In this document: positions 1,386-62,181 of the stretch, piece after piece
How the letters are laid out: each line of letters begins with the position of its first letter
Numbering within the stretch: the first letter of the stretch is position 1
IMG/VR virus record: IMGVR_UViG_3300042691_042003
Location: 62,001 to 126,000 of that record
DNA length: 64,000 nucleotides
Reading direction: 5' to 3' (one strand)
Program-made: the position numbers and the translations under genes
The notes under the pieces: model-generated
The model's input: the letters and a program-made list of their open reading frames with translations, nothing else
Database searches by the model: none
What the model was told of the DNA's origin: nothing

Positions 1386-1440
1386 TGTTAATAATTTTTT
1401 ACCCGAGATTTTTTTATCTCGGGTTTTTTTATTATATTAG
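1386..1440 (+). promoter_or_regulatory. Host-type (Bacteroidota-like) early promoter with upstream TGTTAATAA element
   Basis: TGTTAATAA at 1386 and TATATTAG (variant of TAnnTTTG) at 1433; same architecture at 28259, 33683, 62127. Confidence 0.65.
1401..1430 (+). terminator. Rho-independent terminator after nrdA, embedded in the promoter element
   Basis: ACCCGAGAT...ATCTCGGGT stem followed by a T tract. Confidence 0.75.
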
Positions 1441-1461
1441 CTTATCAAACATATAATATAT

Positions 1462-1866
1462 ATGACTACAAACGAAAAATATGCAATGAATCGTACCATT
1501 GGTATATTCATGGGAGGTGAAATTATCGGTACAGAATCTTATGATAGAGGAGGATCCGAACTTGTTATTGAAAGATGGAAAGTTCCTCAAGGAATTGCTG
1601 CTTATGATGATAGTGCAAAAATAGGATATTTTCATTATGATCTTCATTGGGATCGTTTAATGTCGGTTATAGAAAAAATTGAAGAAATGGGACATTCAGT
1701 TATAATTTCTAGAACCACATGTAAAATTGTAGAAGATTTTAAAATCTATCCTATAATTGATAAGACTTCCGATGAGAAAATAGATGCTGTTTATTTAGCA
1801 ATCTGTGAATTTGTTAAGAAACATAACCATGAGCAATTTTTAGAAGATTTAAAAAATGAAAAATAG
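1462..1866 (+). CDS. Hypothetical phage protein (ABA-sandwich-like, WDxLMxVIEKIE motif)
   Basis: 134 aa ORF directly behind the promoter; HWDRLMSVIEKIE segment. Confidence 0.6.
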   Translation: MTTNEKYAMNRTIGIFMGGEIIGTESYDRGGSELVIERWKVPQGIAAYDDSAKIGYFHYDLHWDRLMSVIEKIEEMGHSVIISRTTCKIVEDFKIYPIIDKTSDEKIDAVYLAICEFVKKHNHEQFLEDLKNEK

Positions 1867-2017
1867 AATAACTCTTTCTGATATAATTCTAATGGATCGA
1901 AAAATCCGTAGAGATATTGAAATAGAAGCAGGAATGAATCGATCTTCCCTTCGAATTCATCGTTCTAAGAAAACTTATACAAGGAAAAACAAACATAAAT
2001 ATGGCGAAGCGATTTGA
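1856..2017 (+). CDS. Small basic protein, 53 aa, with ArfA-like C-terminal motif (not in ORF track)
   Basis: Manual translation MKNRITLSDIILMDRKIRRDIEIEAGMNRSSLRIHRSKKTYTRKNKHKYGEAI; fills the gap and overlaps both neighbours. Confidence 0.65.
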   Translation: MKNRITLSDIILMDRKIRRDIEIEAGMNRSSLRIHRSKKTYTRKNKHKYGEAI

Positions 2018-2249
2018 ATTTTACGTAGGAATTAGTAAAAGTGAAGAAAGTAAATTTTTTGATCTTTTAGAAGATATTAATCTAGATTCAGAATATTCTA
2101 TAGCTAAAATGATCGGATTTTTTGATGATCCTGATTCTTATTATACATTTGTTGTTGAAGGAACAATGGATGCTTATAAAAGATTCTATAGAGTGACTAA
2201 GGAAGGTAACTTAAGTTGGGTAAAATCTCTATATCATTATGAAGAGTGA
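2001..2249 (+). CDS. Hypothetical protein
   Basis: 82 aa ORF overlapping its neighbours. Confidence 0.65.
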   Translation: MAKRFEFYVGISKSEESKFFDLLEDINLDSEYSIAKMIGFFDDPDSYYTFVVEGTMDAYKRFYRVTKEGNLSWVKSLYHYEE

Positions 2250-2496
2250 AAAAATTTTACATATCTTAGAAAAGCCTAAAGCTAAAACCTATTATAAAAT
2301 CGTCGAGGATAAAGATGATCCTTGGTTTATATACATTCAGAAAATTGATAAAAAAACCAAAGAGATTCAAAAAAATTCAATGATAATTGCAAAAGATCTT
2401 GAAAGTCAATTAAAACTTATCAAATCCGATGGATGGGAGGAAACTTCCGAAGAACAACTTACATATAATATTAAAAATCAACAAGATAGAAAATGA
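2239..2496 (+). CDS. Hypothetical protein
   Basis: 85 aa ORF with ATGA overlap to next gene. Confidence 0.65.
   Translation: MKSEKILHILEKPKAKTYYKIVEDKDDPWFIYIQKIDKKTKEIQKNSMIIAKDLESQLKLIKSDGWEETSEEQLTYNIKNQQDRK
2458..2468 (+). promoter_or_regulatory. Candidate middle promoter CTTACATATAA upstream of clamp/polymerase operon
   Basis: Identical 11-mer at 5937 and 28973, near-identical at 49603, each just upstream of a replication gene. Confidence 0.55.
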
Positions 2497-3239
2497 AAAT
2501 ACAAGTAAAGAAAGTTTCTGTTCCTCATTTATCTTCTTTAATTAGAAGAATGTTGCTAATGGACACTTCAGTTTATCTGAACGTAGATTCAGAAAGAATT
2601 TGGTCCGATGTTTATACGCCAACAAAAGATGTAGTAAAATCAATATCTCTTCCTATTGATAATGTTCTACAATTTGATAAACCTCTTACCGAAACAATTA
2701 AGCTATCATTCTTTTCAGGCCAAAGACTTCTTGCTTGTTTAGGTTATTTTGATCCTCATAATCTTTCTGCTGAAATTAATGTTTTTAAAGATGAAGATGA
2801 TGGAATCCTTTATGCAGAAAAGATTATTTTTAAAGACAATCAGTTAAAAATTGAATTACATTGTCAAGATATTTCTCTTGGATTTACTTCAATGACTTCT
2901 GAACAAGTAAAACGAGCATTTGATCTTTCTACAAAAAATTATGAATTTAAGCTTTCTTCAGAAAATTTCTCTAAAGTTCTTTCTTTACAAACTCTCGATA
3001 AATCTGAATTGTTTACAATATACTCAGATAAATCAGGCGTACATATTAAATCGGATTCTTTCGACATTATTATAGACGACAATTATAAAAAAGTAGAAGA
3101 ACCAAGATCAATTTTTAAATCTTTCCTTCAAAGGATCGATAAAGAAACTTATACTGTTACCGTTTGTGAAAATAAAATGATTCTTGTTTCTGACGAATCA
3201 AATACGAATGTCGCATTAAATCTTGCAATCACAGAATGA
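2493..3239 (+). CDS. Probable DNA polymerase sliding clamp (gp45-like)
   Basis: 248 aa, two-domain alpha/beta pattern typical of clamp size; translationally coupled to polymerase; clamp loader present in window. Confidence 0.6.
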   Translation: MKIQVKKVSVPHLSSLIRRMLLMDTSVYLNVDSERIWSDVYTPTKDVVKSISLPIDNVLQFDKPLTETIKLSFFSGQRLLACLGYFDPHNLSAEINVFKDEDDGILYAEKIIFKDNQLKIELHCQDISLGFTSMTSEQVKRAFDLSTKNYEFKLSSENFSKVLSLQTLDKSELFTIYSDKSGVHIKSDSFDIIIDDNYKKVEEPRSIFKSFLQRIDKETYTVTVCENKMILVSDESNTNVALNLAITE

Positions 3240-4432: not shown

Positions 4433-4443
4433 AAATAAAAATT

Positions 4444-28258: not shown

Positions 28259-28313
28259 TGTTAATAAAAAATGTAAAAAAATTTTTTTATTTAGAGATTT
28301 TTTATTATATTTG
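28259..28313 (+). promoter_or_regulatory. Host-type early promoter
   Basis: TGTTAATAA 28259; TATATTTG (TAnnTTTG) 28306-28313. Confidence 0.72.
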
Positions 28314-33682: not shown

Positions 33683-33738
33683 TGTTAATAATTTTTTGGC
33701 TCGGCATTTTTTTATGTCGAGCTTTTTTATTATATTTG
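33683..33738 (+). promoter_or_regulatory. Host-type early promoter
   Basis: TGTTAATAA 33683; TATATTTG 33731-33738. Confidence 0.72.
33699..33728 (+). terminator. Rho-independent terminator ending the array, embedded in the promoter
   Basis: GCTCGGCAT...ATGTCGAGC stem followed by TTTTTT. Confidence 0.75.
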
Positions 33739-37868: not shown

Positions 37869-39710
37869 ATGAGATTCGATTACCAAATTATTTCTAATAA
37901 TATCACTTATAATACAGGTGATACTCTACTTATAGATTTTTCAAATCATTTTCCTTATGTAAAATCTATTGATTCTATAGATTTAGATTTTTCTCCTTTA
38001 GAGACGGATTTAGATGGACATGATATCTACATAAGATGGTCTTATGATATAGAACAGATAGATCGAGCAACAGGAAAACCTCATGTTATTTGGTCTGCTT
38101 GGGTACAATTACCTGGAGAAAAAATTACAGATTCTTCAGTATTTTCTAAAATAATCAGAAACGAATCCGATTCTTTCGATCTACAATTTAAGCTAGTTAG
38201 AAGAGGATCTCTATCAGGAGCTAGAAGAGTAGAAAGAATTGTTATCGAATATACTGAAGGAACTATTCCTGAATCGGTATCGGTTCCTCCTATAAAAAGA
38301 GAGCTATGTAAAGCCAATGCTTGTCCTACTACTAATTTTGCAACAGGGATTACAGTTAAATGTGATTCGAATCTTTTTAGACCTTATGATGTAATTAATC
38401 CTGCGATAAAGCTTTATCAAGAAATTTCTTGTGCAGTTTCCGATATGTTTGGACATTGCGTTAGATATTTTAAAACTCAAGCAAAAATTGAATCTGCAGA
38501 TCCAGTTCTTAAAGAATATTCTCTTTTTGATGTTACCGCGGTAAAAGACATTAAAGTTCTTGTTCCAGATAATCAATTTCCAGATAATGCTATTCGATTT
38601 CTTCCTTATGATATGGATTTTGGTGATGGTCTAGAAGTTCATATAGTTAAAGAACATTTCGAAAGAGCTTTTGGATATGATGATCTTCCTGAACAGAAAG
38701 ATTATATTTATTTTCCTCTTATAGATCGTATATTCGAAGTTAATTCTGCTTATCTTTTTAGGGATTTTATGGCTAACGAATCTTATTATAAAGTTATGCT
38801 TTATAAATGGCAAGATAAGCTTAACGTTATGCGTGAAAATCCTGAAATTGATGAGTATGTTAATAATTTACATGAAAGTCTTGATGAGGTTTTAGGTCCT
38901 GAAATTCAAAAAGAATACATTGAAATAACAAAACCTATGCAATATCAAACTATTGCTATCGGAGGTTACGATCATGTTAGAAGTCATATTAATCAAAATC
39001 TTGTTATAGAGAATAGAGATCTAACAAATTATTTTACGATAGTTGGAAAATATTTTTATGATATGACTAAAGGGATGAATTGGAATGATATTGCTGTACA
39101 ATATAAACTTAAAGTTAATAGAGATTCAAATTCTAATACAGCATTTACTATGTGGTTTAAACCCCAACATACTACAACTAGCACAAATGTTTATGATACC
39201 CTTCTTGACGGATATGATTTACAAAATCAAAAAGGTTTTCATCTTTCTTTAGATTATGTTAGTGCTACAGGACCTTCTAAATCAATAACATTAAGATCCA
39301 ATTCACAAGTTCTAACTTTTGATAAGAATTTTCCGATTCTTTCTAATAATGATTGGTATGCTCTTGTTGTTAATCATATGAATGAATTCGGTCAAGCTTC
39401 AGTTCATATTTGGAAAATGAAATATAATTCTTCTCTTCCACCTAACGGTCAACAGAGAACAACAGATCTCCAACTTATATTTAGTCAAGTTCTTAATATG
39501 AATTCAGAAGCTATTAATCCTACCGATACTATATTCCAATTAAGAGCCGGAACTCTTTATCAAACAAATATTAGAATATGGTCAGAATCTATGGAAGAAG
39601 AAGTACAACCTGTAACACTTAATCAATACGTTGTTAGAGAACAAGACTTAGCACTTCTCATTGATAATGCTGTCAATCCTTTGCGTCTCGTGAAGGAATA
39701 TGTAAGATAA
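37869..39710 (+). CDS. Neck protein (gp14-like core) with N-terminal beta domain and C-terminal LamG-like domain
   Basis: DMFGHCVRYF, F.RAFG...P..KDYIYFP...RIFEV; C-terminal AFTMWFKP, DWYALVV, IRIW. Confidence 0.65.
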   Translation: MRFDYQIISNNITYNTGDTLLIDFSNHFPYVKSIDSIDLDFSPLETDLDGHDIYIRWSYDIEQIDRATGKPHVIWSAWVQLPGEKITDSSVFSKIIRNESDSFDLQFKLVRRGSLSGARRVERIVIEYTEGTIPESVSVPPIKRELCKANACPTTNFATGITVKCDSNLFRPYDVINPAIKLYQEISCAVSDMFGHCVRYFKTQAKIESADPVLKEYSLFDVTAVKDIKVLVPDNQFPDNAIRFLPYDMDFGDGLEVHIVKEHFERAFGYDDLPEQKDYIYFPLIDRIFEVNSAYLFRDFMANESYYKVMLYKWQDKLNVMRENPEIDEYVNNLHESLDEVLGPEIQKEYIEITKPMQYQTIAIGGYDHVRSHINQNLVIENRDLTNYFTIVGKYFYDMTKGMNWNDIAVQYKLKVNRDSNSNTAFTMWFKPQHTTTSTNVYDTLLDGYDLQNQKGFHLSLDYVSATGPSKSITLRSNSQVLTFDKNFPILSNNDWYALVVNHMNEFGQASVHIWKMKYNSSLPPNGQQRTTDLQLIFSQVLNMNSEAINPTDTIFQLRAGTLYQTNIRIWSESMEEEVQPVTLNQYVVREQDLALLIDNAVNPLRLVKEYVR

Positions 39711-46378: not shown

Positions 46379-46422
46379 AATGACTTTAGATAAATAATTA
46401 AATTAAAAAAAGAAGATAAAAA

Positions 46423-46974
46423 ATGCCAGGTTTACCTCATTTTCTAAACAGTAAAGCAGCTACTAAGTTTTACGAACCGTATTATCAAAACCTATTTGAG
46501 GTTACTGTAATTCCTCCAGCAGTTGTTTCCGGAGGATCTATCCTCATCGAACATGTTAATAAGATTTCTGGTCTTAATCAAGACAGAGGAACCGAAATAA
46601 TTACTCAGAAATTTAAATTTGCTGAAAGGAATTATGCTTCTGGTGTTCCTACTGGTACTAGTACTGATTTAAAGATAGAATTCTCTATGAACTTTAACGA
46701 TGCAAATGAATTCTATGTTTATAAAACTCTTAGAGATTGGTGGAGATTAGTTTATAATCCTCTTACTGGTGAGCAAGGATTAAAGAAAGATTATATCGGT
46801 ACTGTTGTTGTTACAAACTTCAATCGTAAAGGAGATATTTGGTGGCAGAGAACTTTCTATAATTGCATTCCTATGTCAGATATTCCTGAATTAACTCACG
46901 ATTACGGTGGTGGTGAAACTCAAGCTCTAGAATTTGGATGGAAATCCGACTACTGGTCTGAGAATATAGTATAA
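46423..46974 (+). CDS. Tail tube protein (gp19)
   Basis: NLFEV, LRDW..LVYNPLTG, KKDY, FYNCIP, DYW; follows the sheath. Confidence 0.88.
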   Translation: MPGLPHFLNSKAATKFYEPYYQNLFEVTVIPPAVVSGGSILIEHVNKISGLNQDRGTEIITQKFKFAERNYASGVPTGTSTDLKIEFSMNFNDANEFYVYKTLRDWWRLVYNPLTGEQGLKKDYIGTVVVTNFNRKGDIWWQRTFYNCIPMSDIPELTHDYGGGETQALEFGWKSDYWSENIV

Positions 46975-47045: not shown

Positions 47046-48170
47046 ATGAAACCAAATCCAAAACCGGTCACTGGATATAGATTGCTTGTTTCTGAACCTT
47101 CGATGAATGATAGCACTGAACAATTCATTCAGGATATAAATGAAGTTTGGAATTCAAGATATCTTACAAATGGCGGACCTAAAGTAATACAATTCCAAGA
47201 AAGATTAAAAGAAAAATATGGATTTCCTAATATATCAGTAGTTGTAAATGGAACTGTAGCTTTACAATCTGCTATTAGATCTCTAAATCTCCCTAAAGGA
47301 GGGAATATTATTACAACACCTTTTACTTGGATATCTACAACATCTTCTATTATTTGGGAAGGATATAAACCTAGATTTGTTGATATAGATCCTTTTACTT
47401 TTAATATTGATCCTAAAAAAATAGAAGAAGCAATTGATGAAGATACGGTTGCTATTCTTGCTGTTCATGTTTTCTCTAATCCTTGTGCTATAGAAGAAAT
47501 TCGTACAATAGCTAATAAGCATGATCTGAAAGTTATATATGATGCCGCTCATGCCTTTGGTGTTCAATATAAAGGAAAAGATGTTTCTCTTTATGGAGAT
47601 ATTTCTATCCATTCTTATCATGCAACAAAAGTTTTTAATACAGGAGAAGGAGGAGCTGTAATTACTTCTGATCGTAAACTATGGGAAAGAATTGAACAAA
47701 TTAAAACTTGTGGTCTTAATGAAAAGAAAGAAATTGTAAGAATTGGTACTAATGCAAAAATTCATGAAATCACTGCTTGTATAGGACTAACTAATTTAGA
47801 AATTGTAGATAAATCAATTCAATACAGAAAAGAACTTTTCGAAAAATATTACGAAAATCTTAAAGACCTTGAAAAAGAAGGAAAAATACAATTTCAAAAA
47901 TTTAATAAAAGCTCTTATAATTTTTCTTATTTACCTATTGTTTTCAAAGATGAAGAAACCGTTATTAAGATAGATAAATCTCTACGAGAAGAACTAATTA
48001 TGTGTAGGAGATATTTTTATCCTTCTTTAAGTAGTCTTAAATGGGCTTATGGACAATCATGTCCTATATCTGAGGATATTTCAAAAAGAATCCTTTGTTT
48101 TCCTTCTCATGATAGAGTTACAAATGAAGATATAAAAATAATTTGTTCAAAAATTAAAGAATGTTTATGA
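47046..48170 (+). CDS. DegT/DnrJ/EryC1/StrS PLP-dependent sugar aminotransferase (VioA-like)
   Basis: LTNGGP, NGTVAL, ITTPFT, FVDID, YDAAHAFG, SYHATKVFNTGEGGA, GTNAK, RRYFYP. Confidence 0.93.
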   Translation: MKPNPKPVTGYRLLVSEPSMNDSTEQFIQDINEVWNSRYLTNGGPKVIQFQERLKEKYGFPNISVVVNGTVALQSAIRSLNLPKGGNIITTPFTWISTTSSIIWEGYKPRFVDIDPFTFNIDPKKIEEAIDEDTVAILAVHVFSNPCAIEEIRTIANKHDLKVIYDAAHAFGVQYKGKDVSLYGDISIHSYHATKVFNTGEGGAVITSDRKLWERIEQIKTCGLNEKKEIVRIGTNAKIHEITACIGLTNLEIVDKSIQYRKELFEKYYENLKDLEKEGKIQFQKFNKSSYNFSYLPIVFKDEETVIKIDKSLREELIMCRRYFYPSLSSLKWAYGQSCPISEDISKRILCFPSHDRVTNEDIKIICSKIKECL

Positions 48171-48589
48171 AAAAATTTTTATTTCTACTTCTCTTCTTAA
48201 TTCCTTTTTCTTCTTTTTCACAAGAAAAAACAGATTCGATTCTAAAGGGATTTTATTCTAGGGTTGATCCAAATAGAACTCTTCAATGTTGTGATAGCTC
48301 AAAAACTCTAGAAGAGATTAAAGTTTCTTTTCTTCTCCCTGAAGGAGTTTATCCTAAACATGATTTTAGCCTTAATCGATATTATGAAGAAAATTTAAGT
48401 CCTTCAATCATCGATGAAGTTACTACAAAATTGGTTTCTACTTATTATCGTAAATTTTCAGATAAAAAAACAAAAAAATTTAAAAATAGTTGTTATAACG
48501 TTTTTATCTCTAATAATGTACAAGATGATATTACTTGTGATGTAATATTTATTGTAGGGAGAGTTCATATTGAAATAAAATTTGAATAA
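48167..48589 (+). CDS. Secreted hypothetical protein
   Basis: MKKFLFLLLFLIPFSSFS/Q signal peptide with Gln at +1, a pattern typical of Bacteroidota secreted proteins. Confidence 0.65.
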   Translation: MKKFLFLLLFLIPFSSFSQEKTDSILKGFYSRVDPNRTLQCCDSSKTLEEIKVSFLLPEGVYPKHDFSLNRYYEENLSPSIIDEVTTKLVSTYYRKFSDKKTKKFKNSCYNVFISNNVQDDITCDVIFIVGRVHIEIKFE

Positions 48590-48594
48590 AAATT

Positions 48595-48624
48595 TTTTTC
48601 TTTGCGAAATTTTTATTATATTTG
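48595..48624 (+). promoter_or_regulatory. Host-type promoter upstream of guaC (no TGTTAATAA element)
   Basis: TTTTATTATATTTGTA with TATATTTG at 48617-48624. Confidence 0.62.
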
Positions 48625-48642: not shown

Positions 48643-49587
48643 ATGAAATTTGATTATCAAGACATTAATTTAGTACCTAGGAAGTGTTCAGTTAACTCAC
48701 GAAATGAATGTGATACTTCTTGCACTTTAGGGAATCATACATTTAAACTTCCTATAGTCCCTGCAAATATGGAATGTGTAATAACTCCTGCAATGGCTAT
48801 TGAATTTTCAAAAAGAGGATATTTTTATATCTTACACAGGTTCATCTCTTCTAATGAAATTATCCATTTCGTTAGATATATGAATGAAAATCGACTTATT
48901 TCTTCAATTTCTTTAGGAGTTAATGATGATTCAAAACAATTAGTTGAAGATTTAATAACAGAAGGATTAACAGTTGATTTTATTACTGTAGATATTGCTC
49001 ATGGTCATTCTATTAAAATGGAAAAGATGCTTAAATTTCTAAAGAAAAGAATGCCAGAATCTTTTATTATTGCAGGTAATATTTCTACCGAAGATGCAGT
49101 ATACGATTTAGAAGAATGGGGAGCTGATGCAATAAAAGTAGGAATAGGTCCGGGATCTGCTTGTACAACATATCCTTCAACCGGTTTTGGGTCAAGAAAT
49201 TGTCAAGCTTCTATCGTTCAAGAATGTTCTAATGTTTCAAATATTCCTATTATAGCAGATGGAGGAATATCTAATCCAGGAGATATTTCTAAAGCCCTTG
49301 TTTTAGGAGCTTCAATGGTTATGATTGGTGGTATGCTCTCTGGTTTCACTGATTCACCAGGAGACACTGTAGAAAAAGAAAATGGATTATATAAGCAATT
49401 TTGGGGCAGTGCATCTAGTTATCAATCTGGAAAAAGTTCGAGAATTGAAGGGAAATTAAATCTTATTCCTTTAAAAAATCGATCTATTTTTGATGAACTT
49501 GTATATATTGAAGAATGTTTACAATCTTCAATTTCTTATGCAGGAGGAAAAGATTTAAGTGCCTTTTTACAAGTCGATTGGATTTGA
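48643..49587 (+). CDS. guaC: GMP reductase
   Basis: FDYQDINLVP, PIVPANM, DIAHGHS, KVGIGPGSACTT, IIADGGI, SSISYAGG; no CBS domains. Confidence 0.92.
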   Translation: MKFDYQDINLVPRKCSVNSRNECDTSCTLGNHTFKLPIVPANMECVITPAMAIEFSKRGYFYILHRFISSNEIIHFVRYMNENRLISSISLGVNDDSKQLVEDLITEGLTVDFITVDIAHGHSIKMEKMLKFLKKRMPESFIIAGNISTEDAVYDLEEWGADAIKVGIGPGSACTTYPSTGFGSRNCQASIVQECSNVSNIPIIADGGISNPGDISKALVLGASMVMIGGMLSGFTDSPGDTVEKENGLYKQFWGSASSYQSGKSSRIEGKLNLIPLKNRSIFDELVYIEECLQSSISYAGGKDLSAFLQVDWI

Positions 49588-49632: not shown

Positions 49633-51468
49633 ATGGAGACTGTAGAAATAAGTAAGAAGTATTCTCTACTAAACGAAATAGAACACGTTCTTAAAAGGCC
49701 AGGAATGTATGTGGGATCAACAAAACCACATGCTTCTTCTGAATTTCTTTTTAATAGAGAACGATTTGAAAAGAAAGAAGTTCAATACAATCCAGGATTC
49801 CTTAAACTTTTCGACGAAATTGTTTCTAATTCAGTAGATGAATCAAAAAGAAATTCTAATCTAAATTACATTCATGTAACTCTTAATGAGAAAACAGGAG
49901 AAATTTCAGTATGGGATAACGGTGGAATTCCTGTTATTATTCATACTGAACATAATATTTGGATTCCAGAACTGATTTTTTCTAATCTACGAGCAGGTTC
50001 TAATTTTGATGATACTCAATCAAGGACAGTTGCAGGAACAAATGGTGTAGGTGCTTCTCTTACTAATATTTTTTCTAAAAGATTTACAATTAAAACTGCA
50101 GACGGTAAAAATCAATTTGTTCAAACATTTTCAGAAAATATGTCTGAAAGAACAAAACCGAAAATTATCGAATCTGATAAAAAATTCACAGAAATTTCTT
50201 ATATAACCGATTTTAAACAATTCGGTATGGATCAAATCGATGAAACCCATATCGATATGATTCGTAAAAGACTTATAGATATTGCAGCTTGCAATCCTCA
50301 TCTAAAAGTACAATTTAATAACGAGAAATTTCGATTTAAAACATTTAAAGAATATGCTGATCTTTATGGTGAAGGCACATTCTATGAAAGATCTGAAAAT
50401 TGGGAAATTGCCTTTTGCCCGTCTAATTCAGGATTTCAATCAATTTCATTTGTAAATTCGATTGAGACAAAAGATGGTGGGACTCATGTAAACTTTATCA
50501 TGGGTCAGACAATTGATAAACTTCGTCATATGATTTGGAAAAAACATAAGGTTGATATTAAGCCTTCTGATATTAAAAATCACATAACGATTTTTATCAA
50601 TTGTACCGTCATCAATCCTTCTTTTTCTTCTCAAACTAAAGAAAAACTTATTACTGAAGTAAAAGATTTTGGATCTACTCATGTTATTTCTGATAAGCTA
50701 ATTAAAATTCTTTTTCAATCAGAAATTGTTGCTTCTATACTCGATTGGATTGAAAGAAAAAAACTTGCAGAAGAACGAGCTCAGTTAAGAAAATTAAATA
50801 AAGATCTTAATACAAGCAAGATTTTAAAGCTAATCGATGCAAAATCTAGAACAGAACGAGATAAATGTGTTTTAGGTATATTTGAAGGTGATTCAGCTAA
50901 ATCAGCAGTAAGACAATATCGAGATCCTCAAATATTTGGTGCTTTTCCTCTTAAAGGAAAATTTCTAAATGTTTCGGAAATGAAAAATACTGATGTAATA
51001 AAAAACGAAGAAGTTGTTAATCTTATGGGTTCTATAGGTCTTCGATTAGGTGAAGAACCTACAAATCTTCGTTATGGTAAAATTCTTATATTTACTGATG
51101 CTGATCCCGATGGTGATGCTATCGCTGCTCTTCTTCTAAATTTTTTCAATCGTTATTGGCCTGAACTTTTCGATCGAGGAATGATTTATCGAGTTCTTAC
51201 TCCTCTTGTTGTTGCAAAGAAAGGTAAATCAGTACAACAATTCTATTCAAAAGAAGAATATGTAGAATGGGAAAAGAAAACCGATACAAAAGGTTGGAAT
51301 GTAGAATACAAGAAAGGACTCGCTGCTCTTGAAGATGACGAGTATCAACAAATCATAACAAATCCTAAAACCGTTCAAATAAAGAATGATCCTCTTTTTA
51401 GAGAATCCCTTGATGCATGGTTTGGTGGAGATTCAAATAAACGTAAAACAAGACTTCTTAAATTTTAA
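49633..51468 (+). CDS. Type IIA DNA topoisomerase large subunit (gp39+gp60, GyrB-like)
   Basis: EHVLKRPGMYVGS, DEIVSNSVD, GTNGVG, EGDSA, PLKGK, TDADPDG, YKKGL. Confidence 0.96.
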   Translation: METVEISKKYSLLNEIEHVLKRPGMYVGSTKPHASSEFLFNRERFEKKEVQYNPGFLKLFDEIVSNSVDESKRNSNLNYIHVTLNEKTGEISVWDNGGIPVIIHTEHNIWIPELIFSNLRAGSNFDDTQSRTVAGTNGVGASLTNIFSKRFTIKTADGKNQFVQTFSENMSERTKPKIIESDKKFTEISYITDFKQFGMDQIDETHIDMIRKRLIDIAACNPHLKVQFNNEKFRFKTFKEYADLYGEGTFYERSENWEIAFCPSNSGFQSISFVNSIETKDGGTHVNFIMGQTIDKLRHMIWKKHKVDIKPSDIKNHITIFINCTVINPSFSSQTKEKLITEVKDFGSTHVISDKLIKILFQSEIVASILDWIERKKLAEERAQLRKLNKDLNTSKILKLIDAKSRTERDKCVLGIFEGDSAKSAVRQYRDPQIFGAFPLKGKFLNVSEMKNTDVIKNEEVVNLMGSIGLRLGEEPTNLRYGKILIFTDADPDGDAIAALLLNFFNRYWPELFDRGMIYRVLTPLVVAKKGKSVQQFYSKEEYVEWEKKTDTKGWNVEYKKGLAALEDDEYQQIITNPKTVQIKNDPLFRESLDAWFGGDSNKRKTRLLKF

Positions 51469-55322: not shown

Positions 55323-58300
55323 ATGGCCGTAAGACAAGAAGATGTTAATAGCGCTATGTTGTCCATCCTTAAAAAGATGGACAAGATGGTGCAGGCTTCA
55401 GCCGAATCTTATAATAATCAAAATACTATATTAACTTCTATAGAAAAAACTTTTAAAGTTGAAGTTTCTGTAGAATTAAAGAAGCAGACTAAATTACTTA
55501 CTTCTATAAATTCTTCTTTTCTAAAAGAAGAAAAAAGAAGTGAAGCTAGTGTTTTCGATTTTTTTAAAAGAAAATCTTCTGAAGATAGATGGAAAGATAG
55601 CGTATTAAGAAATTTAGAACATCATACTAGATTATTAATTTTAATAAAAAATAAAGAATCCGGAGGAAAGGGAAGTACTAATTTTAATATCCAAACTAAT
55701 CTAGATAAAGTTTTGCTAGCTTTACCAGAGGCTTTATTAAAATTATTAAAAGTTGTTGGAACAGCTTTTTTATTAGGACCAATACTAGAAGAAGGAGCTT
55801 TAGTTTTAACTAAAGTACTTAAAACTTTACTTAATTTTTCTAAAGATGTAAAAATATCTACTGCTCTAAAATCTGTAGTTTTTATAGCAGTTTTAGAAGC
55901 TTCAAAATTAAGAGACTTATTAAAATTATTTAAAGAAGTAGGTGGTATTTTTTCTATATTTACTCTAGGTGATATAGATGGAGGAGCAAAAAGAATTTCT
56001 AGAGCAATTACACATTTACTTTCAATAGGATTACCTACAAAAGAAAATCCGAAAGGATTGAATGTAGTGGATGCTGTATTTTCTTCTTTCGCTATCAATT
56101 TATTAGCAAATGCACCACTTAAAAATTTAATAGACGCTTTAGCAGATCCAATAGATTTTTGGTCCTTAATTGGAGTAGAAAAGGGGACAAAAGCTACAAA
56201 AGCCATGGTAGATTCTATTAGAGGATTATTAAAAATTTCCGAAGGAATTAGATGGCAAGATGTTCTTTGGTCAGTTTTAGCTATAAAATATCTAGCAGAA
56301 TCTCCTATAGGAGATCTAATAAATGCTTTAAAACCTGGATTTTTTGCTACTATGTTCTCTGCTTCTGGAGGAGGAGCAAAAATACAAAGGAGAGCTGAAG
56401 GTTTTGCAGGAGCGATAAGATCACTACTACTAGTATCCGAAGGAATAGAACCAGAAACAATAATTAGTAGTATTGTTTCTATAGGGATTCTAGCTTATAG
56501 TGTAGATGTTTTAATTAGTGCTATGAAAAGCGCTGCTATTTGGAATCCACTTCTAATTATTGGAGTAAAAATAACTAGAAAAATTATTAATACTCTAGTA
56601 GGAGGAATGTCAGAGGTTCTAAAAGATGGAGAAAATTTAGTTTATGCAGGAATTTACCTTGTTCTACTTTCATTCTCTTTAGGAACTATTATGACTATGA
56701 CTGTTGTTGCTGCTCTTTTAGCACCTTTAGTTATGATAGGAGGATTAGTTATTAGATTTACTATTAATCAGCTTTTATCTATTAAAAGATCGGTAGATAA
56801 AGAAAATCTAGATCAAGCGGTAATAACTAAATTTGAAACTTTAGGATTAATAGTTTCTGCTGTTATAGGTGCTATAGCTCTTCTTATAGCTCTTGATAAT
56901 AAAGCTCCTTTAACCGATGTTCTAATAAAAATAGGATTTTTTCTTGTTATTAGTAATGTTTTAACTTTCACAACTCTATTTTTAAGTAAGAAATTATCTA
57001 CTGCAAAACAAGGAGATTTTGACAAATTTGCTTTGATGGCAACAGGTATAACTAATATGATGAATGCAATATCTATAGTTATTCTTTCTAAAGCTTTAGA
57101 AAATCCAGCAGAATCTTTTAAAAGAGTTATTATGTTTGTTGTTCTTTTTGCAGCAATTTCATTTTCAACAATGTATACTGTAAGTCTTTTAACTAAGACT
57201 AAAAAAGGAAATTTTGATTCTTTAGCTTTACTTTCTACCGGTATAACAAATATTCTTAATGCTATAGCTGTTGTTATACTTTCAAAAGCTTTAGAAAATC
57301 CTCCAGATTCTTTTGCTAAAGTATTTATGTTTATTTTAATATTTGGAGCTTTAGTTCTGACTACGAGTTTAGCAGTAAAACAAATACAAAATGTTAAATT
57401 CCATTCTATTATTGCTTTTGGAGTATTAGTTATTTCTATGGTTGCAACCGTTGCATTAGTTATTCTATTTATGAATGCATATGGAACAGGGTCTATCCAA
57501 AATATTATAATGTTTTCTCTCCTATTAGGAGCTATTGCCTATGCTGCTTCTTTCTTTTCTAAAAAATTAGGAACAAAAAATGCATTTAATCAAATTTTAA
57601 AAGCTTCATTAGCAATAGTCATATTTTCGACTGCTATTACTTTAGTAGCTTTAATGATTAATAATTTTGTTTCTATGGTAGATCCTTTATCGGTTTTATC
57701 TCTTTTAGTAACTATATCAGCAATTTCATATATAGCTATGCATATAGGGAAAAAAGAAAAAGATATAATGAAAGGAGCTAAAGCTTTTGGAGCTATATCT
57801 TTATCGTTAACTCTATTTATTGCTCCTCTATATCTTTTTGCTAAATCAGGATTTGGATTAATGGAAGCTTTATCTCTAGGATTAATTCTTTTAGGAGTTA
57901 CGGGAGTATTTTTCTTAGCAGGAAAAAAAGAAAAAGATATAAAAAGCGGAGCTCTAGCTTTAGGACTAGCAGGATTAGCATTAATACCTATCTCATTTTC
58001 TTTATCCATTTTTGCTAAATCAGGATTTAGTATTGAAAATTCTATAGCTCTTTCTTTATCACTTATAGGAATGGCTTATGGATTTGCTTTAGCAGGGAAA
58101 AAATGGAAAGATGTTCTGAAAGGTGCTCTAGCTTTAAGTATTGCAGGATTAGCATTATTTGCAATCACTCCTTCTCTAATGAATTTTGCTAAATCTGGTT
58201 TTAGTATTGAAAATTCTATAGCACTCTCGATATCACTTATAGGAATGGCATTCGGATTTGCTTTAGCAGGAAAAATGTGGGTAAATGTTTTGAAAGGTGC

Positions 58301-60443
58301 TCTAGCTTTAAGTATTGCAGGATTAGCATTATTTGCAATCACTCCTGGATTAGCAGTATTTGCTATGTCGGGATTTGGAATTATGAGTGCTCTTTCATTA
58401 ACTCTTGTTCTTTTAGGTATGTCAGTAGGATTTGGTTTTGCAGGTATAATGTGGAAATCTATCATGAAAGGTGCTCTAGCTTTAACTATTGCAGGAATAT
58501 CTTTATTGCTAATAACACCAGGATTAGCAGTATTTGCTATTTCAGGTTTTGATCCTATGAGTGCTCTTTCATTAACTCTGGTTTTAATTGGTATGTCAAT
58601 AGGTTTTGGATTTGCTGGAATGATGTGGAAATCTATTATGAAAGGTTCTATCGCCTTAATTATTGCAGGAATATCTTTATTGCTAATAACACCAGGATTA
58701 GCAGTATTTGCTATGTCAGGATTTGGAATTATGAATGCTTTATCCCTTACCGTTGCTTTAATAGGTATATCAATCGGTTTTGGATTAGCTGGAATGATGT
58801 GGACTTCTATCATTAAAGGAGCTATTGCTTTAACTATAGCAGGATTATCTCTATGGCTAATAACACCTCCTTTAGTACTTTTTGCTAAATCTGGATTTAC
58901 TATAATGGATGGATTAACTCTAGCAGGAACTTTAGGATTAATAGCGGTAGTTTTTGGATTAACTGGAGTTTTCTTTGCCCCTGTTGCTTTAGGAGCAGTT
59001 GCTTTAGGACTTTCTGCAATTGCTATATGGCTAATGACTTATGCTTTAAAAGAATTCCAATCTCTTAATTGGACCGAAAAAGATAGCGATAAATTAACTT
59101 ATACTATAAAATCCGTATTAGGTGCTCTTTCTGGTACGAGTGATAAAAAAGGTATAATGGATAATATAACAGGAGCTGTAGGACAAGGCTTACAAGCTAT
59201 TATGGCTCTTCTTTCTGCAGGACCTCTTCTAGTAGGATCTGCTGCAATTTGGTTAATGTCTGTAGCATTAGAAAAATTCCAATCAATTAATTGGGGATCT
59301 TCTGATAATGAACATTTAGCTTTAACTATATCTGCAGTACTAGGAGCTCTTTCTGGAAGTGCTCCAAACATACCAAAAGCTAATGTAGCAACAAGGATGT
59401 TAGATACGATAATAGCCTTTATGGGAGCAGGAGCTTTAGTTGTAGGATCCGCTGCAATTTGGCTAATGTCTGAAGCTTTAATTAAATTTAAAACTGTCGG
59501 TTGGGATAAAACACAAAATTCAGTATTAGGAGATACTATTAGTTTACTTTTAGGTACTCTTTCTGGTAGTTCTCCTAGTGGAGCAGGAGCTGCTTCAGGG
59601 AAACGTGATATATTGGATATAATTATTTCATTAATGTCAGCTGGAGTTTTAGTATTCGCTGCTGCATCTATATGGTTACTTTCTGAAGCTTTACTTAAGT
59701 TTAAATCAGTTAAATGGACTGCTAACGATACTAAACAACTATCATTCACTATGAATGAAATCCTTTCGGTAATGACAGGAGCAGAAAAAGATGGTGGACT
59801 TTTCGGTGCAATTACAGGTGCAGCAAAAAGTCTTATAGGTTCTGTAGGTAGTGCAGGTAATGCTACATCTTTAGGACTTGCTTCTTTATCGATAATTAAA
59901 TTATCTGATGCTTTACTTAAATGGAAGAATTTAGGATGGGATAAAAATCAAACTAGTAATTTAAGAAATGCAATAGATCAAATTCTGCTTGCATTTAAAT
60001 CCAGCACTCCAGATGGATTGGAATCAGTTGCAGATAATTTTGACAAAATTCAAAATTCTATGAAGCTTCTTAAAGGTCATATAAATGATATGGATCTTAA
60101 GAAACTTACACTTACTGATTCAATGATGAGATCCATTGCTATGCTTTCTAAATCTCCTGAAGCTATAGGACAAAAAATAGCAGAATCTATCGATAAAGCT
60201 TTTGAAGATCTCGCTAAAGCTATCGCTGAATCTATTGGAGAAATTAAATCCGAAGGAGGAGGAGCCGCAGGAGCTGTAGAAACTACAGCTGCACCAGCCA
60301 AAGGATCTCCTGCTCCAGGTGCACCAGCTAAAGGATCTCCTGCTCCTCCTCAAGGTAAAATGCCTACCGCTTCAGAAATAGGCAATGCAGTTTCTAATGC
60401 TCTATTAGCATCAACATTAAAAGTAAGAGTAGTTACTCCTTAA
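55323..60443 (+). CDS. Tape measure protein
   Basis: 1706 aa Ala/Gly/hydrophobic helical repeats directly after hub chaperone genes. Confidence 0.75.
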   Translation: MAVRQEDVNSAMLSILKKMDKMVQASAESYNNQNTILTSIEKTFKVEVSVELKKQTKLLTSINSSFLKEEKRSEASVFDFFKRKSSEDRWKDSVLRNLEHHTRLLILIKNKESGGKGSTNFNIQTNLDKVLLALPEALLKLLKVVGTAFLLGPILEEGALVLTKVLKTLLNFSKDVKISTALKSVVFIAVLEASKLRDLLKLFKEVGGIFSIFTLGDIDGGAKRISRAITHLLSIGLPTKENPKGLNVVDAVFSSFAINLLANAPLKNLIDALADPIDFWSLIGVEKGTKATKAMVDSIRGLLKISEGIRWQDVLWSVLAIKYLAESPIGDLINALKPGFFATMFSASGGGAKIQRRAEGFAGAIRSLLLVSEGIEPETIISSIVSIGILAYSVDVLISAMKSAAIWNPLLIIGVKITRKIINTLVGGMSEVLKDGENLVYAGIYLVLLSFSLGTIMTMTVVAALLAPLVMIGGLVIRFTINQLLSIKRSVDKENLDQAVITKFETLGLIVSAVIGAIALLIALDNKAPLTDVLIKIGFFLVISNVLTFTTLFLSKKLSTAKQGDFDKFALMATGITNMMNAISIVILSKALENPAESFKRVIMFVVLFAAISFSTMYTVSLLTKTKKGNFDSLALLSTGITNILNAIAVVILSKALENPPDSFAKVFMFILIFGALVLTTSLAVKQIQNVKFHSIIAFGVLVISMVATVALVILFMNAYGTGSIQNIIMFSLLLGAIAYAASFFSKKLGTKNAFNQILKASLAIVIFSTAITLVALMINNFVSMVDPLSVLSLLVTISAISYIAMHIGKKEKDIMKGAKAFGAISLSLTLFIAPLYLFAKSGFGLMEALSLGLILLGVTGVFFLAGKKEKDIKSGALALGLAGLALIPISFSLSIFAKSGFSIENSIALSLSLIGMAYGFALAGKKWKDVLKGALALSIAGLALFAITPSLMNFAKSGFSIENSIALSISLIGMAFGFALAGKMWVNVLKGALALSIAGLALFAITPGLAVFAMSGFGIMSALSLTLVLLGMSVGFGFAGIMWKSIMKGALALTIAGISLLLITPGLAVFAISGFDPMSALSLTLVLIGMSIGFGFAGMMWKSIMKGSIALIIAGISLLLITPGLAVFAMSGFGIMNALSLTVALIGISIGFGLAGMMWTSIIKGAIALTIAGLSLWLITPPLVLFAKSGFTIMDGLTLAGTLGLIAVVFGLTGVFFAPVALGAVALGLSAIAIWLMTYALKEFQSLNWTEKDSDKLTYTIKSVLGALSGTSDKKGIMDNITGAVGQGLQAIMALLSAGPLLVGSAAIWLMSVALEKFQSINWGSSDNEHLALTISAVLGALSGSAPNIPKANVATRMLDTIIAFMGAGALVVGSAAIWLMSEALIKFKTVGWDKTQNSVLGDTISLLLGTLSGSSPSGAGAASGKRDILDIIISLMSAGVLVFAAASIWLLSEALLKFKSVKWTANDTKQLSFTMNEILSVMTGAEKDGGLFGAITGAAKSLIGSVGSAGNATSLGLASLSIIKLSDALLKWKNLGWDKNQTSNLRNAIDQILLAFKSSTPDGLESVADNFDKIQNSMKLLKGHINDMDLKKLTLTDSMMRSIAMLSKSPEAIGQKIAESIDKAFEDLAKAIAESIGEIKSEGGGAAGAVETTAAPAKGSPAPGAPAKGSPAPPQGKMPTASEIGNAVSNALLASTLKVRVVTP
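57740..58960 (+). repeat. About 7 tandem 174-bp (58-aa) repeats inside the tape measure gene
   Basis: FAxSGF...ALSL.L.L.GM..GF..AG..W..I.KGALAL.IAG unit; CTAAATCAGGATTT at 57841 and 58015. Confidence 0.85.
60291..60348 (+). repeat. 2 x 30-bp repeat encoding APAKGSPAP
   Basis: Read directly from the sequence. Confidence 0.85.
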
Positions 60444-60462
60444 AAACTAAAATAAAAAATTT

Positions 60463-61218
60463 ATGGCTAGAAAATCCAAATCTCTTTCTCAAGAAGAACA
60501 ACAAGAAATTTTTGATTCTATTATGAATCAACCTAATCAATCTCTTAAAAATGCAAAAATCGATTTAAAATTTAAAAATCCTAATCAAAAACTTTTTGCT
60601 GAGTATATAGAAGAAAAGGAGGTTATAATTTGTTCTGGACCTGCAGGAACCGGTAAAACTTATATTGCTTGTGCTCAAGCACTTAAGCTTCTTAAAAATG
60701 ATGAACGTTTTAAAAAGATTTATATTGTAAAATCAGTTACAACTCTTAAGGATGAAGAAATTGGTTATTTAAAAGGCTCTATGGAAGAAAAGATGGAGCC
60801 TTTTGTGTATTCTTTTATTCATAATTTTGAAAAGATCGTAGGTAAATCGGTTATTAATTCTATGAAAGAAAATGGCACAATACAAATTATGCCGATTGCT
60901 TATTTAAGAGGGATAAATTTTGATGATTGTATAGTTCTTATTGACGAATGTCAAAACATTACACCTGATAATATGCATACAATTATGACTCGTTTAGGAT
61001 CTAATTGTAAGATGATTTTTATGGGAGATGCTGCTCAGATAGATCTCAGAAATAAAAGAAATTCTTCTCTTCAGCTAATTATGGATCGTTTTTCTAGATT
61101 AACAGAATTTGGATGTATGAATTTTTCTAATCATGATATTGTTAGAAATCCTCTAATCAAGAAAATAGAAGAAATATTTAATAACATTTCTGAAACTAGT
61201 AAAAAGCCACAATCATAA
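60463..61218 (+). CDS. phoH: PhoH-family ATPase
   Basis: GPAGTGKT, IGYLKG, YLRG, DECQN, TRLG, GD..QID, DIVRNP. Confidence 0.94.
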   Translation: MARKSKSLSQEEQQEIFDSIMNQPNQSLKNAKIDLKFKNPNQKLFAEYIEEKEVIICSGPAGTGKTYIACAQALKLLKNDERFKKIYIVKSVTTLKDEEIGYLKGSMEEKMEPFVYSFIHNFEKIVGKSVINSMKENGTIQIMPIAYLRGINFDDCIVLIDECQNITPDNMHTIMTRLGSNCKMIFMGDAAQIDLRNKRNSSLQLIMDRFSRLTEFGCMNFSNHDIVRNPLIKKIEEIFNNISETSKKPQS

Positions 61219-61230
61219 AATTAAAAAAGC

Positions 61231-61740
61231 ATGAAAACATTTTTTACGAGTGATACTCTATTTGGGAGAAATTATATAGCTCTTGAAAGAGGATTTGAAT
61301 CTGAAGAAGAAATGGCTGATGCTTATATCACAAATTGGAATGAAAAAATTTCTAAAGAAGATATTGTCTATCATCTAGGAAATTTTTCTTGGGATCCGAT
61401 TTCTTGTGAAAGTACTATGTCCGTTTTAAATGGTAAAATCCATTTTATTATGGGACCTTACGATACACATCTTCCTCAAATGTCTATGATTAAATTAAAT
61501 AGACATGTAATTGTTCAAAATCAAATTTCTTACATACATAATAAAAAAGCAATTATTTCTCATTGGCCTCTTTTAGATTGGCCAGGTAAAGAAGAAGGAA
61601 TAATACATGTACATGGAGGTAATTTTGAAACCGAAGCAAAACTAAATTCTTTCCGATTTAATGCTAACATTAGCTCTTGGAATAGTGGACCTATTGAACT
61701 AGATTTTCTTTTAGATATCGTTAAATCATACAATTCATGA
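61231..61740 (+). CDS. Calcineurin-like metallophosphoesterase homologue with degenerate metal ligands
   Basis: FTSDTLFG, WNE.I...D.VYHLGNF, GPYD, SHWP, HVHGG. Confidence 0.75.
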   Translation: MKTFFTSDTLFGRNYIALERGFESEEEMADAYITNWNEKISKEDIVYHLGNFSWDPISCESTMSVLNGKIHFIMGPYDTHLPQMSMIKLNRHVIVQNQISYIHNKKAIISHWPLLDWPGKEEGIIHVHGGNFETEAKLNSFRFNANISSWNSGPIELDFLLDIVKSYNS

Positions 61741-62123
61741 AAAAAGATTTAATTCTTTTCCGAGGCTTACCTGGATCAGGTAAGTCTACTTTGGCATCTC
61801 TTCTTTGTGATGTTCATTATTCAGCTGATATGTTCTTCGAAAAAGACGGAGAATATAAATTTGATATTTCTCTTATTAAAGAAGCTCATGAATTTTGTAA
61901 AGAGAAAGTAGAAGAAGCTATGGCTGAAGGAGTAGGAACTATTGGTGTTGCTAATACATTTACTATGGATTGGGAAATGGATCCTTATTTCTTTCTAGCA
62001 GAATATTTCGGATATCAAATTCATACCGTAATAGTAGAAAATCGACACGGTTCCAAGAATATACATAATTGTCCTGAAGAAAAAATAAAGATGATGAAAG
62101 ACAGATTTAGCATTAATTTATAA
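61737..62123 (+). CDS. P-loop kinase (AAA_33 / polynucleotide-kinase-like)
   Basis: RGLPGSGKST, SADMFF, AHEFC, VANTF, NIHNCP. Confidence 0.88.
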   Translation: MKKDLILFRGLPGSGKSTLASLLCDVHYSADMFFEKDGEYKFDISLIKEAHEFCKEKVEEAMAEGVGTIGVANTFTMDWEMDPYFFLAEYFGYQIHTVIVENRHGSKNIHNCPEEKIKMMKDRFSINL

Positions 62124-62126
62124 AAA

Positions 62127-62181
62127 TGTTAATAACTTTTTCAAAACTATTTTTATTTTTGGAATATATTTATTATATTTG
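62127..62181 (+). promoter_or_regulatory. Host-type early promoter upstream of the phage sigma gene
   Basis: TGTTAATAA 62127; TATATTTG 62174-62181. Confidence 0.72.

What the first reader, a model, noticed from the sequence alone, without database searches (positions are those of the whole stretch)
1386..62181. Early promoters carry a TGTTAATAA box at a fixed 47-48 nt spacing, and two double as terminators
Seen: TGTTAATAA starts 47, 47, 48 and 47 nt before the TATATT(T/A)G box at 1386, 28259, 33683 and 62127, with a T-rich TTTTAT element between them. At 1401 and 33699 the spacer is a stem-loop plus T tract that ends the upstream operon. Known: TAnnTTTG is the -7 element of the Bacteroidota primary sigma. 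Inference: the upstream 9-mer is a binding site for an activator or alpha-CTD; its reverse complement TTATTAACA resembles the DnaA box (TTATCCACA), so a host or packaged protein may gate early transcription.
Basis: partly seen in the sequence, partly recalled or inferred. Interest (0 to 1): 0.6.

Follow-up and report, generated by a model that had tools for sequence, protein, structure and literature searches.

The report
Phased upstream box in phage promoters
A giant phage of Bacteroidota starts its replication-gene operons with a compact promoter that has a conserved 10-12-bp box one fixed number of helix turns upstream (sometimes with a terminator hairpin folded inside it), and the same box at the same distances also sits in front of chromosomal genes of the host phylum, so it looks like an undescribed host-read promoter element that the phage copies.

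Summary
TGTTAATAA lies 47/47/48/47 nt before TATATT(T/A)G at window 1386, 28259, 33683 and 62127 (0 such composites in 100 shuffles), and two spacers are real + strand intrinsic terminators. The window is part of a 246-kb T4-like jumbo phage; the whole genome has 6 exact and 3 degenerate copies, all intergenic, 16-46 nt before start codons of DNA-metabolism genes and of a phage sigma factor. Related phages carry 21-26 copies each (TGTTAATAAC, strand bias 21:1 and 26:0). Box-to-(-7) distances fall in classes 47-48, 57-58 and 68-70 nt, i.e. whole helix turns. In 401 Bacteroidales genomes the 12-mer TGTTAATAACTT followed by TAnnTTTG occurs 148 times against 38 for a reversed control, piled at offsets 38, 48-49 and 58-60, before gyrB/parE, dnaB, dnaX, nrdD, tdk, uvrD, mraZ and others. 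So the 9-mer is the core of a host-type, helically phased upstream promoter element (centre about -55), most likely a site for a host protein that contacts RNA polymerase. "Early" is only partly right (pre-late, mainly replication genes; ORFan genes use a variant box; structural genes use a T4-late-like motif). The DnaA idea is neither proven nor excluded. No RNA data could be obtained.

The parts
1386..1440 (+). Cassette 1: box 1386-1394, terminator hairpin 1401-1424 with the T7 run (1409-1415) in its loop, T tail 1425-1431, -7 box TATATTAG 1433-1440; precedes ORF 1462-1866 (134 aa, unknown), follows RNR large subunit (ends 1351)
28259..28313 (+). Cassette 2: box 28259-28267, T7 run 28282-28288, -7 box TATATTTG 28306-28313; no hairpin; upstream genes are on the minus strand; precedes 65-aa and 145-aa ORFs and the gp44-like clamp loader (28990-29943)
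33683..33738 (+). Cassette 3: box 33683-33691, terminator hairpin 33698-33723 (two G.U pairs, T7 run 33707-33713 in the loop), T tail, -7 box TATATTTG 33731-33738; precedes 5'-3' exonuclease/RNase H-like gene 33784-35037
62127..62181 (+). Cassette 4: box 62127-62135 (TGTTAATAAC), T-rich middle, -7 box TATATTTG 62174-62181; no strong hairpin; precedes the phage sigma-70-family gene 62199-62807
48570..48624 (+). Fifth core promoter of the same type (T7 run plus TTATTATATTTG) with a degenerate upstream box; precedes IMPDH/GMP-reductase-like gene 48643-49587 and topoisomerase II large subunit 49633-51468
38858..38866 (+). Stray copy of the 9-mer inside ORF 37869-39710, no -7 box downstream: chance occurrence, not part of the system
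46554..46562 (+). Stray copy of the 9-mer inside the tail-tube-like ORF 46423-46974, no -7 box downstream: chance occurrence

Best explanation
The 9-mer is the core of a 10-12-bp upstream promoter element, TGTTAATAAC(TT), flanked by an A-run and a T-run, that belongs to the promoter grammar of Bacteroidota and is used heavily by a clade of T4-like jumbo phages. The full cassette reads: box (about -59 to -51 if TAnnTTTG lies at -12 to -5), a T5-7 run at the place of the -33 element, a T-rich stretch, then TATTATATT(T/A)G as the -7 box, with the start codon 16-46 nt further on. Host RNA polymerase with its primary sigma reads the -7/-33 part; the box is bound on one face of the helix by a protein already present in the uninfected cell (a sequence-specific host activator, or less likely the alpha C-terminal domain itself), which contacts polymerase and raises recruitment to the phage's pre-late promoters. 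Because only the box, the T-run and the -7 box are contacted, the spacer arms are free, and in about 4 of 10 cassettes they form a GC-rich hairpin whose loop is the T-run and whose U-tail is the T-rich stretch before the -7 box: an intrinsic terminator for the upstream operon nested inside the next promoter. Shown: sequence anatomy, spacing classes, orientation, conservation, host occurrence, hairpin thermodynamics. Inferred: transcription start, activation, identity of the binding protein, timing.
For: Composite is non-random. Genome-wide 6 exact + 3 degenerate copies, all + strand, all intergenic, 16-46 nt before ATG. Relatives: TGTTAATAAC 21 (+) vs 1 (-) in a 129-kb record and 26 vs 0 in a 254-kb record, at orthologous genes (NAD ligase, clamp loader, topo II, endonuclease, primase/helicase) while spacers differ. 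Spacing classes 47-48 (37 sites), 57-58 (9), 68-70 (4); tandem boxes 11-12 bp apart. At least 95 further distinct sites in other IMG/VR contigs, 58 with the same spacing. Host: 86 hits of 12-mer+TTATATTTG in species genomes, about 70 in Bacteroidota, 46 independent groups peaked at N=35-36; in 401 Bacteroidales genomes 148 matches vs 38 reversed controls with peaks at offsets 38, 48-49, 58-60; same three phases in Flavobacteriales. Orthologous host promoters (parE/gyrB-like in 9 species, gyrB in 5-6 Flavobacteriales, bcp, PadR) keep the box but not the spacer. TAnnTTTG at -12 to -5 in Flavobacterium (PMC9723704). Hairpins: 16 of 41 cassettes <= -9.6 kcal/mol, z <= -4.6, T tails, 13 G.U pairs, weaker on the minus strand in 10 of 15. 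Cassette 2 follows minus-strand genes, so the box there cannot be a 3'-UTR signal. No Shine-Dalgarno signal, A-rich leaders: Bacteroidota-type host.
Against: The plain 9-mer is not enriched in five host genomes and the 10-mer with any TAnnTTTG was at control level in a phylum-wide sample; the signal appears only with the 12-mer and in the offset distribution. The -33 position holds TTTT rather than the consensus TTTG, and one -7 box is TATATTAG, so recognition by the host primary sigma is inferred from similarity only. The binding protein is unidentified. The host of this phage is not known.
Confidence: 0.7

Rival explanations
1. The box is a DnaA-type box and host DnaA (ATP-DnaA level, i.e. 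replication status) gates these promoters, tying phage replication genes to the host's replication-gene regulon.
For: Reverse complement TTATTAACA differs from the relaxed DnaA box TTATNCACA at one base; with the flanking C it matches 8 of 10 of TGTGGATAAC. In the same 401 genomes the variants TGTG[N]ATAACTT, including 12 perfect TGTGGATAAC, fall into the same three phased windows. Host genes behind the box include gyrB/parE, dnaB, dnaX, uvrD/pcrA, nrdD, tdk, mraZ; phage genes are clamp loader, topo II, primase/helicase, ligase, RNase H. Local clusters of 7-8 TGTT(G/A)ATAA boxes exist in two host loci.
Against: The preferred sequence has A where DnaA boxes keep C6; TGTTAATAACTT is about 4-fold over control whereas the DnaA-type variants together are at control level. 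dnaA promoters of four Bacteroidota carry TT(A/G)TTCACA, keeping the CACA half, and a Prevotella origin was located with E. coli-type boxes (PMC4755523). The box is strictly oriented and helically phased, which DnaA boxes need not be. No origin-like cluster in five complete genomes. Many host targets are unrelated to replication (bcp, PadR, XRE, NlpC/P60, malate dehydrogenase, transposases).
Confidence: 0.18
2. The box is an UP-element-like site read directly by the alpha C-terminal domains of host RNA polymerase, without any extra factor.
For: Position about -55, A-run before and T-run after the box, tandem copies 11-12 bp apart as for the two UP subsites, presence in strong-looking phage promoters and in host housekeeping promoters.
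Against: Invariant G and C in a 10-12-bp asymmetric word suggest base-specific major-groove reading rather than the A-tract minor-groove reading known for alpha-CTD; the element also works near -44 and -66 to -77; host targets are not the ribosomal/rRNA promoters where UP elements are typical (one search found no rRNA or tRNA directly behind 18 host sites).
Confidence: 0.15
3. The box is the site of a phage-encoded (or virion-packaged) activator, making these 'middle' promoters in the manner of T4 MotA.
For: In this genome the exact box marks replication/nucleotide genes and the sigma gene, while ORFan genes at 163-215 kb use another upstream word; T4 has the same three-tier logic.
Against: The same 12-mer at the same phased offsets stands before chromosomal housekeeping genes in many Bacteroidota; in the two relatives nearly all pre-late promoters, including those of small ORFs, carry the box; the box sits at -55, not in place of the -33 element.
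Confidence: 0.06
4. The conservation reflects a mobile or recombining regulatory cassette (PeSL-like homology patch) or an RNA-level 3'-end signal, not a transcription-factor site.
For: Cassettes resemble PeSLs, which are thought to mediate modular shuffling (PMC4122927); hairpin stems share a CTCGA core; one host IS-like element is flanked by inverted boxes.
Against: Within each genome the spacers differ while the box is invariant; helical phasing and fixed orientation relative to the -7 box are not expected from recombination; cassette 2 has no upstream + strand gene.
Confidence: 0.05

Closest known systems
PeSL (promoter-early stem-loop) cassettes of T4-like phages RB49/phi1, PST/T4, nt-1/KVP40 (PMC2839356, PMC4122927)
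   Same: Small intergenic cassettes in T4-like phages that combine a strong host-type promoter with a stem-loop terminator, an AT-rich upstream part and a short leader; many copies per genome; a parallel set with a different upstream word exists (PmSL there, class 2 here).
   Different: In PeSLs the stem-loop lies just upstream of the -35 box of a sigma-70 promoter; here it is nested between the upstream box and the -7 box with the -33 T-run as its loop. The promoter grammar is Bacteroidota (-33/-7). The -55 box has no PeSL counterpart. A role in shuffling was not tested here.
UP elements and class I activator sites (e.g. CRP at -61.5, -72.5, -82.5) of E. coli promoters; extended T4 early promoters
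   Same: Upstream element about one to three helix turns above the core promoter, active only on one face of the helix, raising polymerase recruitment; used by phage early promoters to outcompete the host (established knowledge).
   Different: Different phylum, different word with invariant G and C, asymmetric single site, reader unknown.
T4 middle promoters (MotA box TGCTT at -30 with AsiA)
   Same: A short asymmetric box plus a normal downstream element in front of replication genes and of the late sigma gene of a T4-like phage.
   Different: MotA box replaces the -35 element and is read by a phage protein; here the box is at -55, the -33 T-run is kept, and host chromosomes use the same box.
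DnaA box (TTATNCACA) acting as a transcription operator
   Same: 9-mer similar in 8 of 9 relaxed positions; canonical boxes occupy the same slots in some host promoters; targets include replication and nucleotide genes.
   Different: Departs at the conserved C6; oriented and phased; no origin clusters found.

Membership tests
Bacteroidota primary-sigma promoter (-33 TTTG / -7 TAnnTTTG) | -7 box TAnnTTTG | tested here: met
   TATATTTG at 28306, 33731, 62174; TATATTAG (one departure) at 1433; consensus from PMC9723704
Bacteroidota primary-sigma promoter (-33 TTTG / -7 TAnnTTTG) | -33 element TTTG/TTG about 19 bp upstream of the -7 box | tested here: inconclusive
   A run of 5-7 T covers that position (17 nt between its end and TA), giving TTTT not TTTG; TTTG occurs in some sites but only 12 nt upstream
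Bacteroidota primary-sigma promoter (-33 TTTG / -7 TAnnTTTG) | Mapped transcription start 5-8 nt after the box | not testable with these tools
PeSL composite promoter-terminator cassette | Strong host-type promoter joined to an effective stem-loop terminator in one short intergenic unit of a T4-like phage | tested here: met
   Hairpins with T tails in 4 of 9 cassettes of this genome and 16 of 41 in three genomes; T4-like clamp loader, topo II, portal, sheath
PeSL composite promoter-terminator cassette | Stem-loop placed just upstream of the -35 box | tested here: not met
   Hairpin lies between the box and the -7 box and encloses the -33 T-run (PMC4122927 Fig. 3 legend)
PeSL composite promoter-terminator cassette | Concentrated in hyperplastic regions and flanking indels between close relatives | not tested
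   Only noted that the variant class 2 cassettes lie among ORFans at genome 163-215 kb
UP element (alpha-CTD site) | A/T-only consensus at -38 to -59 read in the minor groove | tested here: not met
   Box has invariant G and C; also active-looking at offsets one turn nearer and one to two turns farther
DnaA box | Match to TTATNCACA | tested here: not met
   TTATTAACA: A instead of C at position 6; two mismatches to TTATCCACA (sequence)
DnaA box | Clusters at the replication origin / dnaA promoter of the host group | tested here: inconclusive
   dnaA promoters carry TT(A/G)TTCACA, not the box; no tandem clusters in five complete genomes; two loci with 7-8 boxes of unknown nature
DnaA box | Binding by DnaA | not testable with these tools
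   needs protein-DNA assay
T4-type middle promoter | Activator box replaces the -35 element and is read by a phage-encoded protein | tested here: not met
   Box at about -55 with the -33 T-run kept; same box in host chromosomes
Intrinsic (factor-independent) terminator | GC-rich stem, short loop, run of T on the transcribed strand | tested here: met
   1401-1424 + T7; 33698-33723 + T5; loops of 6-8 nt are longer than usual

The most novel reading that the evidence does not exclude
TGTTAATAAC(TT) is an undescribed, phylum-wide promoter element of Bacteroidota, read by one conserved host protein (a dedicated activator, or DnaA with a shifted preference) that couples gyrB/parE, dnaB, dnaX, nrdD, tdk and mraZ to one signal; jumbo T4-like phages place the same element, at the same helical phases, before their own replication modules and so plug them into the host's replication-gene circuit, while nesting terminators inside the promoters.
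Probability: 0.3. Interest if true: 0.8.

Novelty: new variant of a known kind. Interest (0 to 1): 0.64.

Why it matters
Promoters of Bacteroidota are described by two elements only (-33 and -7); no paper in the searched library holds this word together with Bacteroidota terms. A third, helically phased element shared by chromosomes and phages would (i) point to an unknown polymerase-contacting protein in a phylum that dominates gut and marine communities, (ii) give a handle for predicting pre-late genes in uncultured Bacteroidota phages, (iii) supply compact, strong promoter-terminator parts for engineering Bacteroides and Flavobacterium, and (iv) offer a testable case of a phage wiring its replication genes to a host regulator.

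Tried and rejected
Megablast of 8 kb and tblastn of the 1706-aa ORF against GenBank phages: no match; topo II tblastn gave only distant relatives (best 57%, uncultured megaphages). First viral pattern scan was too loose: most of 119 loci were chance hits. Literal motif searches in papers gave only unrelated hits; no paper combines TAnnTTTG with 'UP element'. Plain 9-mer count in five host genomes: at control level, no cluster seen. 10-mer + TAnnTTTG in a phylum-wide sample: at control level. Rfam on 18 host loci: no rRNA/tRNA directly behind the box, so 'mimic of rRNA promoters' was dropped. dnaA-region and tandem-box scans for an origin made of these boxes: nothing convincing. Reading TGTTAA-N17-T-run as a second, sigma-like promoter was considered and dropped: the T-run is not conserved in one relative and nothing supports a start inside the hairpin. 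My count of offsets was made by hand from the listed coordinates.


Full report
WHAT IS THERE. The composite TGTTAATAA-N36-42-TATATTWG occurs four times in the window, all on the + strand, at 1386, 28259, 33683 and 62127, with distances of 47, 47, 48 and 47 nt from box start to TATATT; none of 100 dinucleotide-preserving shuffles gave a single match. The 9-mer alone is only mildly over-represented (6 against 2.1 expected); its two other copies (38858, 46554) lie inside ORFs without a -7 box. A run of 5-7 T starts 23 nt after the box start. The terminator scanner reports + strand stem-loops with T tails at 1401-1424 and 33698-33723, with folding energies of -14.7 and -15.1 kcal/mol and z-scores of -10.5 and -8.6.

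CONTEXT. The window is bases 62001-126000 of a 246,081-bp virus record with direct terminal repeats. Of about 321 ORF-called genes, 312 are on the + strand. The window holds T4-like replication and nucleotide genes (RNR large subunit, gp44-like clamp loader, 5'-3' exonuclease, topoisomerase II, Fpg-like glycosylase, IMPDH/GMP reductase) and structural genes (portal, prohead protease, major head, terminase, sheath, tube). Shine-Dalgarno cores are depleted before start codons (7% against 13.5% in random windows) and leaders are A-rich, as in Bacteroidota. No close relative is in GenBank phages.

THE CASSETTE FAMILY. Genome-wide there are six exact composites and three more with the same core but a degenerate box; all are intergenic, on the + strand, with the G of the -7 box 16-46 nt before an ATG. 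The genes behind them are: an unknown 134-aa ORF, the clamp-loader operon, the exonuclease, IMPDH/topo II, a sigma-70-family factor (regions 2 and 4), an endonuclease, a primase/helicase piece, NAD-dependent ligase and one unknown. A second class of 11 or more cassettes at genome 163-215 kb shares the T-run and TTTGTATTATATTAGCT but has ATGTAATATCCGTGTA upstream, that is two TGTA words 10-11 bp apart, the proximal one at the very position of TGT in the box; these precede small ORFs without any PHROG match. A third motif, (A/G)ATATAA(T/A)A close to the start codon, precedes portal, protease, sheath and tube genes. The partition by gene function resembles the early / middle / late scheme of T4, but timing itself is untested.

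RELATIVES. A pattern scan of viral contigs and whole-record searches found the same architecture in a 254-kb record (26 TGTTAATAAC on the + strand, none on the other), a 129-kb record (21 against 1), a 122-kb near-copy of the first and a 72-kb record. Box, T-run and -7 box are the conserved columns; the spacers are not. Orthologous genes (ligase, clamp loader, topo II, endonuclease phrog_8420, primase/helicase, DNA-binding phrog_624) carry the cassette in all genomes. Distances from box start to TATATT are 47-48 (37 sites), 57-58 (nine, counting a variant -7 box) and 68-70 (four); tandem boxes are 11-12 bp apart. A stricter scan found at least 95 further distinct sites in many other IMG/VR contigs, 58 with the same spacing.

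TERMINATORS INSIDE PROMOTERS. Folding the stretch between box and -7 box splits the cassettes in two groups: 16 of 41 have hairpins of -9.6 to -18 kcal/mol (z at or below -4.6) followed by a T tail, the rest have nothing. Stems differ by paired changes around a CTCGA core; 13 of 157 pairs are G.U on the + strand, and 10 of 15 hairpins are weaker when the minus strand is folded. The T-run forms the loop and the T-rich stretch before the -7 box is the tail. The cassette behind minus-strand genes (28259) has no hairpin. The closest described objects are the PeSL cassettes of T4-like phages, where the stem-loop lies upstream of the -35 box (PMC4122927); here it is nested in the promoter.

THE BOX IS A HOST-TYPE ELEMENT. 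A scan of one genome per species for TGTTAATAACTT-N32-40-TTATATTTG gave 86 hits, about 70 in Bacteroidota. They form 46 independent groups whose spacer lengths peak at 35-36 (13 and 12 groups; 0-7 elsewhere), the phage spacing. Orthologous promoters keep the box but not the spacer. In 401 genomes of the order of a Carboxylicivirga genome, TGTTAATAACTT-N20-50-TANNTTTG matched 148 times in 109 genomes against 38 for the reversed control; by my count from the coordinates the offsets pile at 38 (14), 47-50 (56) and 57-61 (41). In 151 Flavobacteriales genomes the total is near control (20 against 16) but the matches again sit at those three phases, including a gyrB promoter conserved in five or six genomes. 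Genes behind the host boxes, confirmed by Pfam, include GyrB/ParE-type subunits, DnaB, DnaX, UvrD/PcrA, NrdD, thymidine kinase and MraZ, beside bcp, PadR, XRE regulators, malate dehydrogenase, NlpC/P60 and transposases. With TAnnTTTG at -12 to -5 (PMC9723704), the 12-mer is centred near -44, -55 and -66. A fixed face of the helix, strict orientation and use in uninfected-cell promoters argue for a host protein that touches RNA polymerase.

WHO READS IT. This is open. Direct reading by alpha-CTD fits the position and the A/T flanks but not the invariant G and C. A phage activator is unlikely given host usage. DnaA stays possible: the variants TGTG[N]ATAACTT, twelve of them perfect TGTGGATAAC, fall in the same three windows, and the host and phage targets are rich in replication genes. 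Against it: these variants together are at control level while the T/A form is about four-fold enriched; dnaA promoters of four Bacteroidota keep the CACA half; a Prevotella origin was found with E. coli-type boxes (PMC4755523); five complete genomes show no origin-like cluster of the box. Two host loci with 7-8 boxes in 200 bp remain unexplained.

VERDICT. The cassette is a new variant of known kinds (PeSL-like promoter-terminator units; phased upstream activator sites); the box itself appears undescribed in the searched literature. All functional statements rest on sequence statistics and comparison; no transcript or binding data could be obtained.

Noticed in passing
window 62199-62807: Phage-encoded sigma-70-family factor (regions 2 and 4, 202 aa, ECF-like size) directly behind box promoter 4; a candidate late sigma, as gene 55 is in T4.
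   Followed up: partly
window about 18262-18297, 19915-19956, 42975-43007, 46350-46422: T4-late-like motif (A/G)ATATAA(T/A)A 10-35 nt before the start codons of portal, prohead protease, tail sheath and tail tube genes, often right after GC-rich hairpin terminators; 73 genes of the genome have such a word within 60 nt upstream.
   Followed up: partly
outside the window: genome 163353-214098 (L181-L184): Eleven or more copies of a roughly 110-bp cassette (ATGTAATATCCGTGTA, T-run, TTTGTATTATATTAGCT, then TATCAAATTAA leader) before small ORFs with no PHROG match: probably the true early, hyperplastic region; PeSL-like.
   Followed up: partly
window 55323-60443: 1706-aa ORF with no PHROG family and no tblastn match in GenBank phages.
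   Followed up: no
window 48643-49587, 47046-48170, 35202-36020: Metabolic or repair genes unusual for phages: IMPDH/GMP-reductase-like, aminotransferase-like, Fpg/Nei-type DNA glycosylase.
   Followed up: no
L445 about 2039-2240; L446 about 1959-2146: Two Bacteroidales loci with 7-8 TGTT(G/A)ATAA boxes in both orientations within 200 bp, in intergenic DNA or at a contig end; origin-like or a regulatory hub, nature unknown.
   Followed up: partly
L444 241-260 and 2387-2395: A 576-aa IS-like ORF in a Bacteroidales contig is flanked by inverted copies of the box (tandem TGTTAATAAC/TGTTGATAAC at one end, TTATCAACA at the other): the box may also ride on mobile elements as an outward or own promoter part.
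   Followed up: no
L306 about 985-1020, L304, L303 (dnaA upstream regions): dnaA promoters of Flavobacterium, Thalassobellus and Aureibaculum carry TT(A/G)TTCACA overlapping the -7 box after a T9-10 run: a likely DnaA autoregulation site.
   Followed up: partly
L308, L309, L318, L322, L336 and others: A separate group of roughly 30-kb viral contigs has the 12-mer 33 nt before TTATATTTG followed by an A-rich spacer and a conserved small gene: the box is used beyond the jumbo-phage clade.
   Followed up: no
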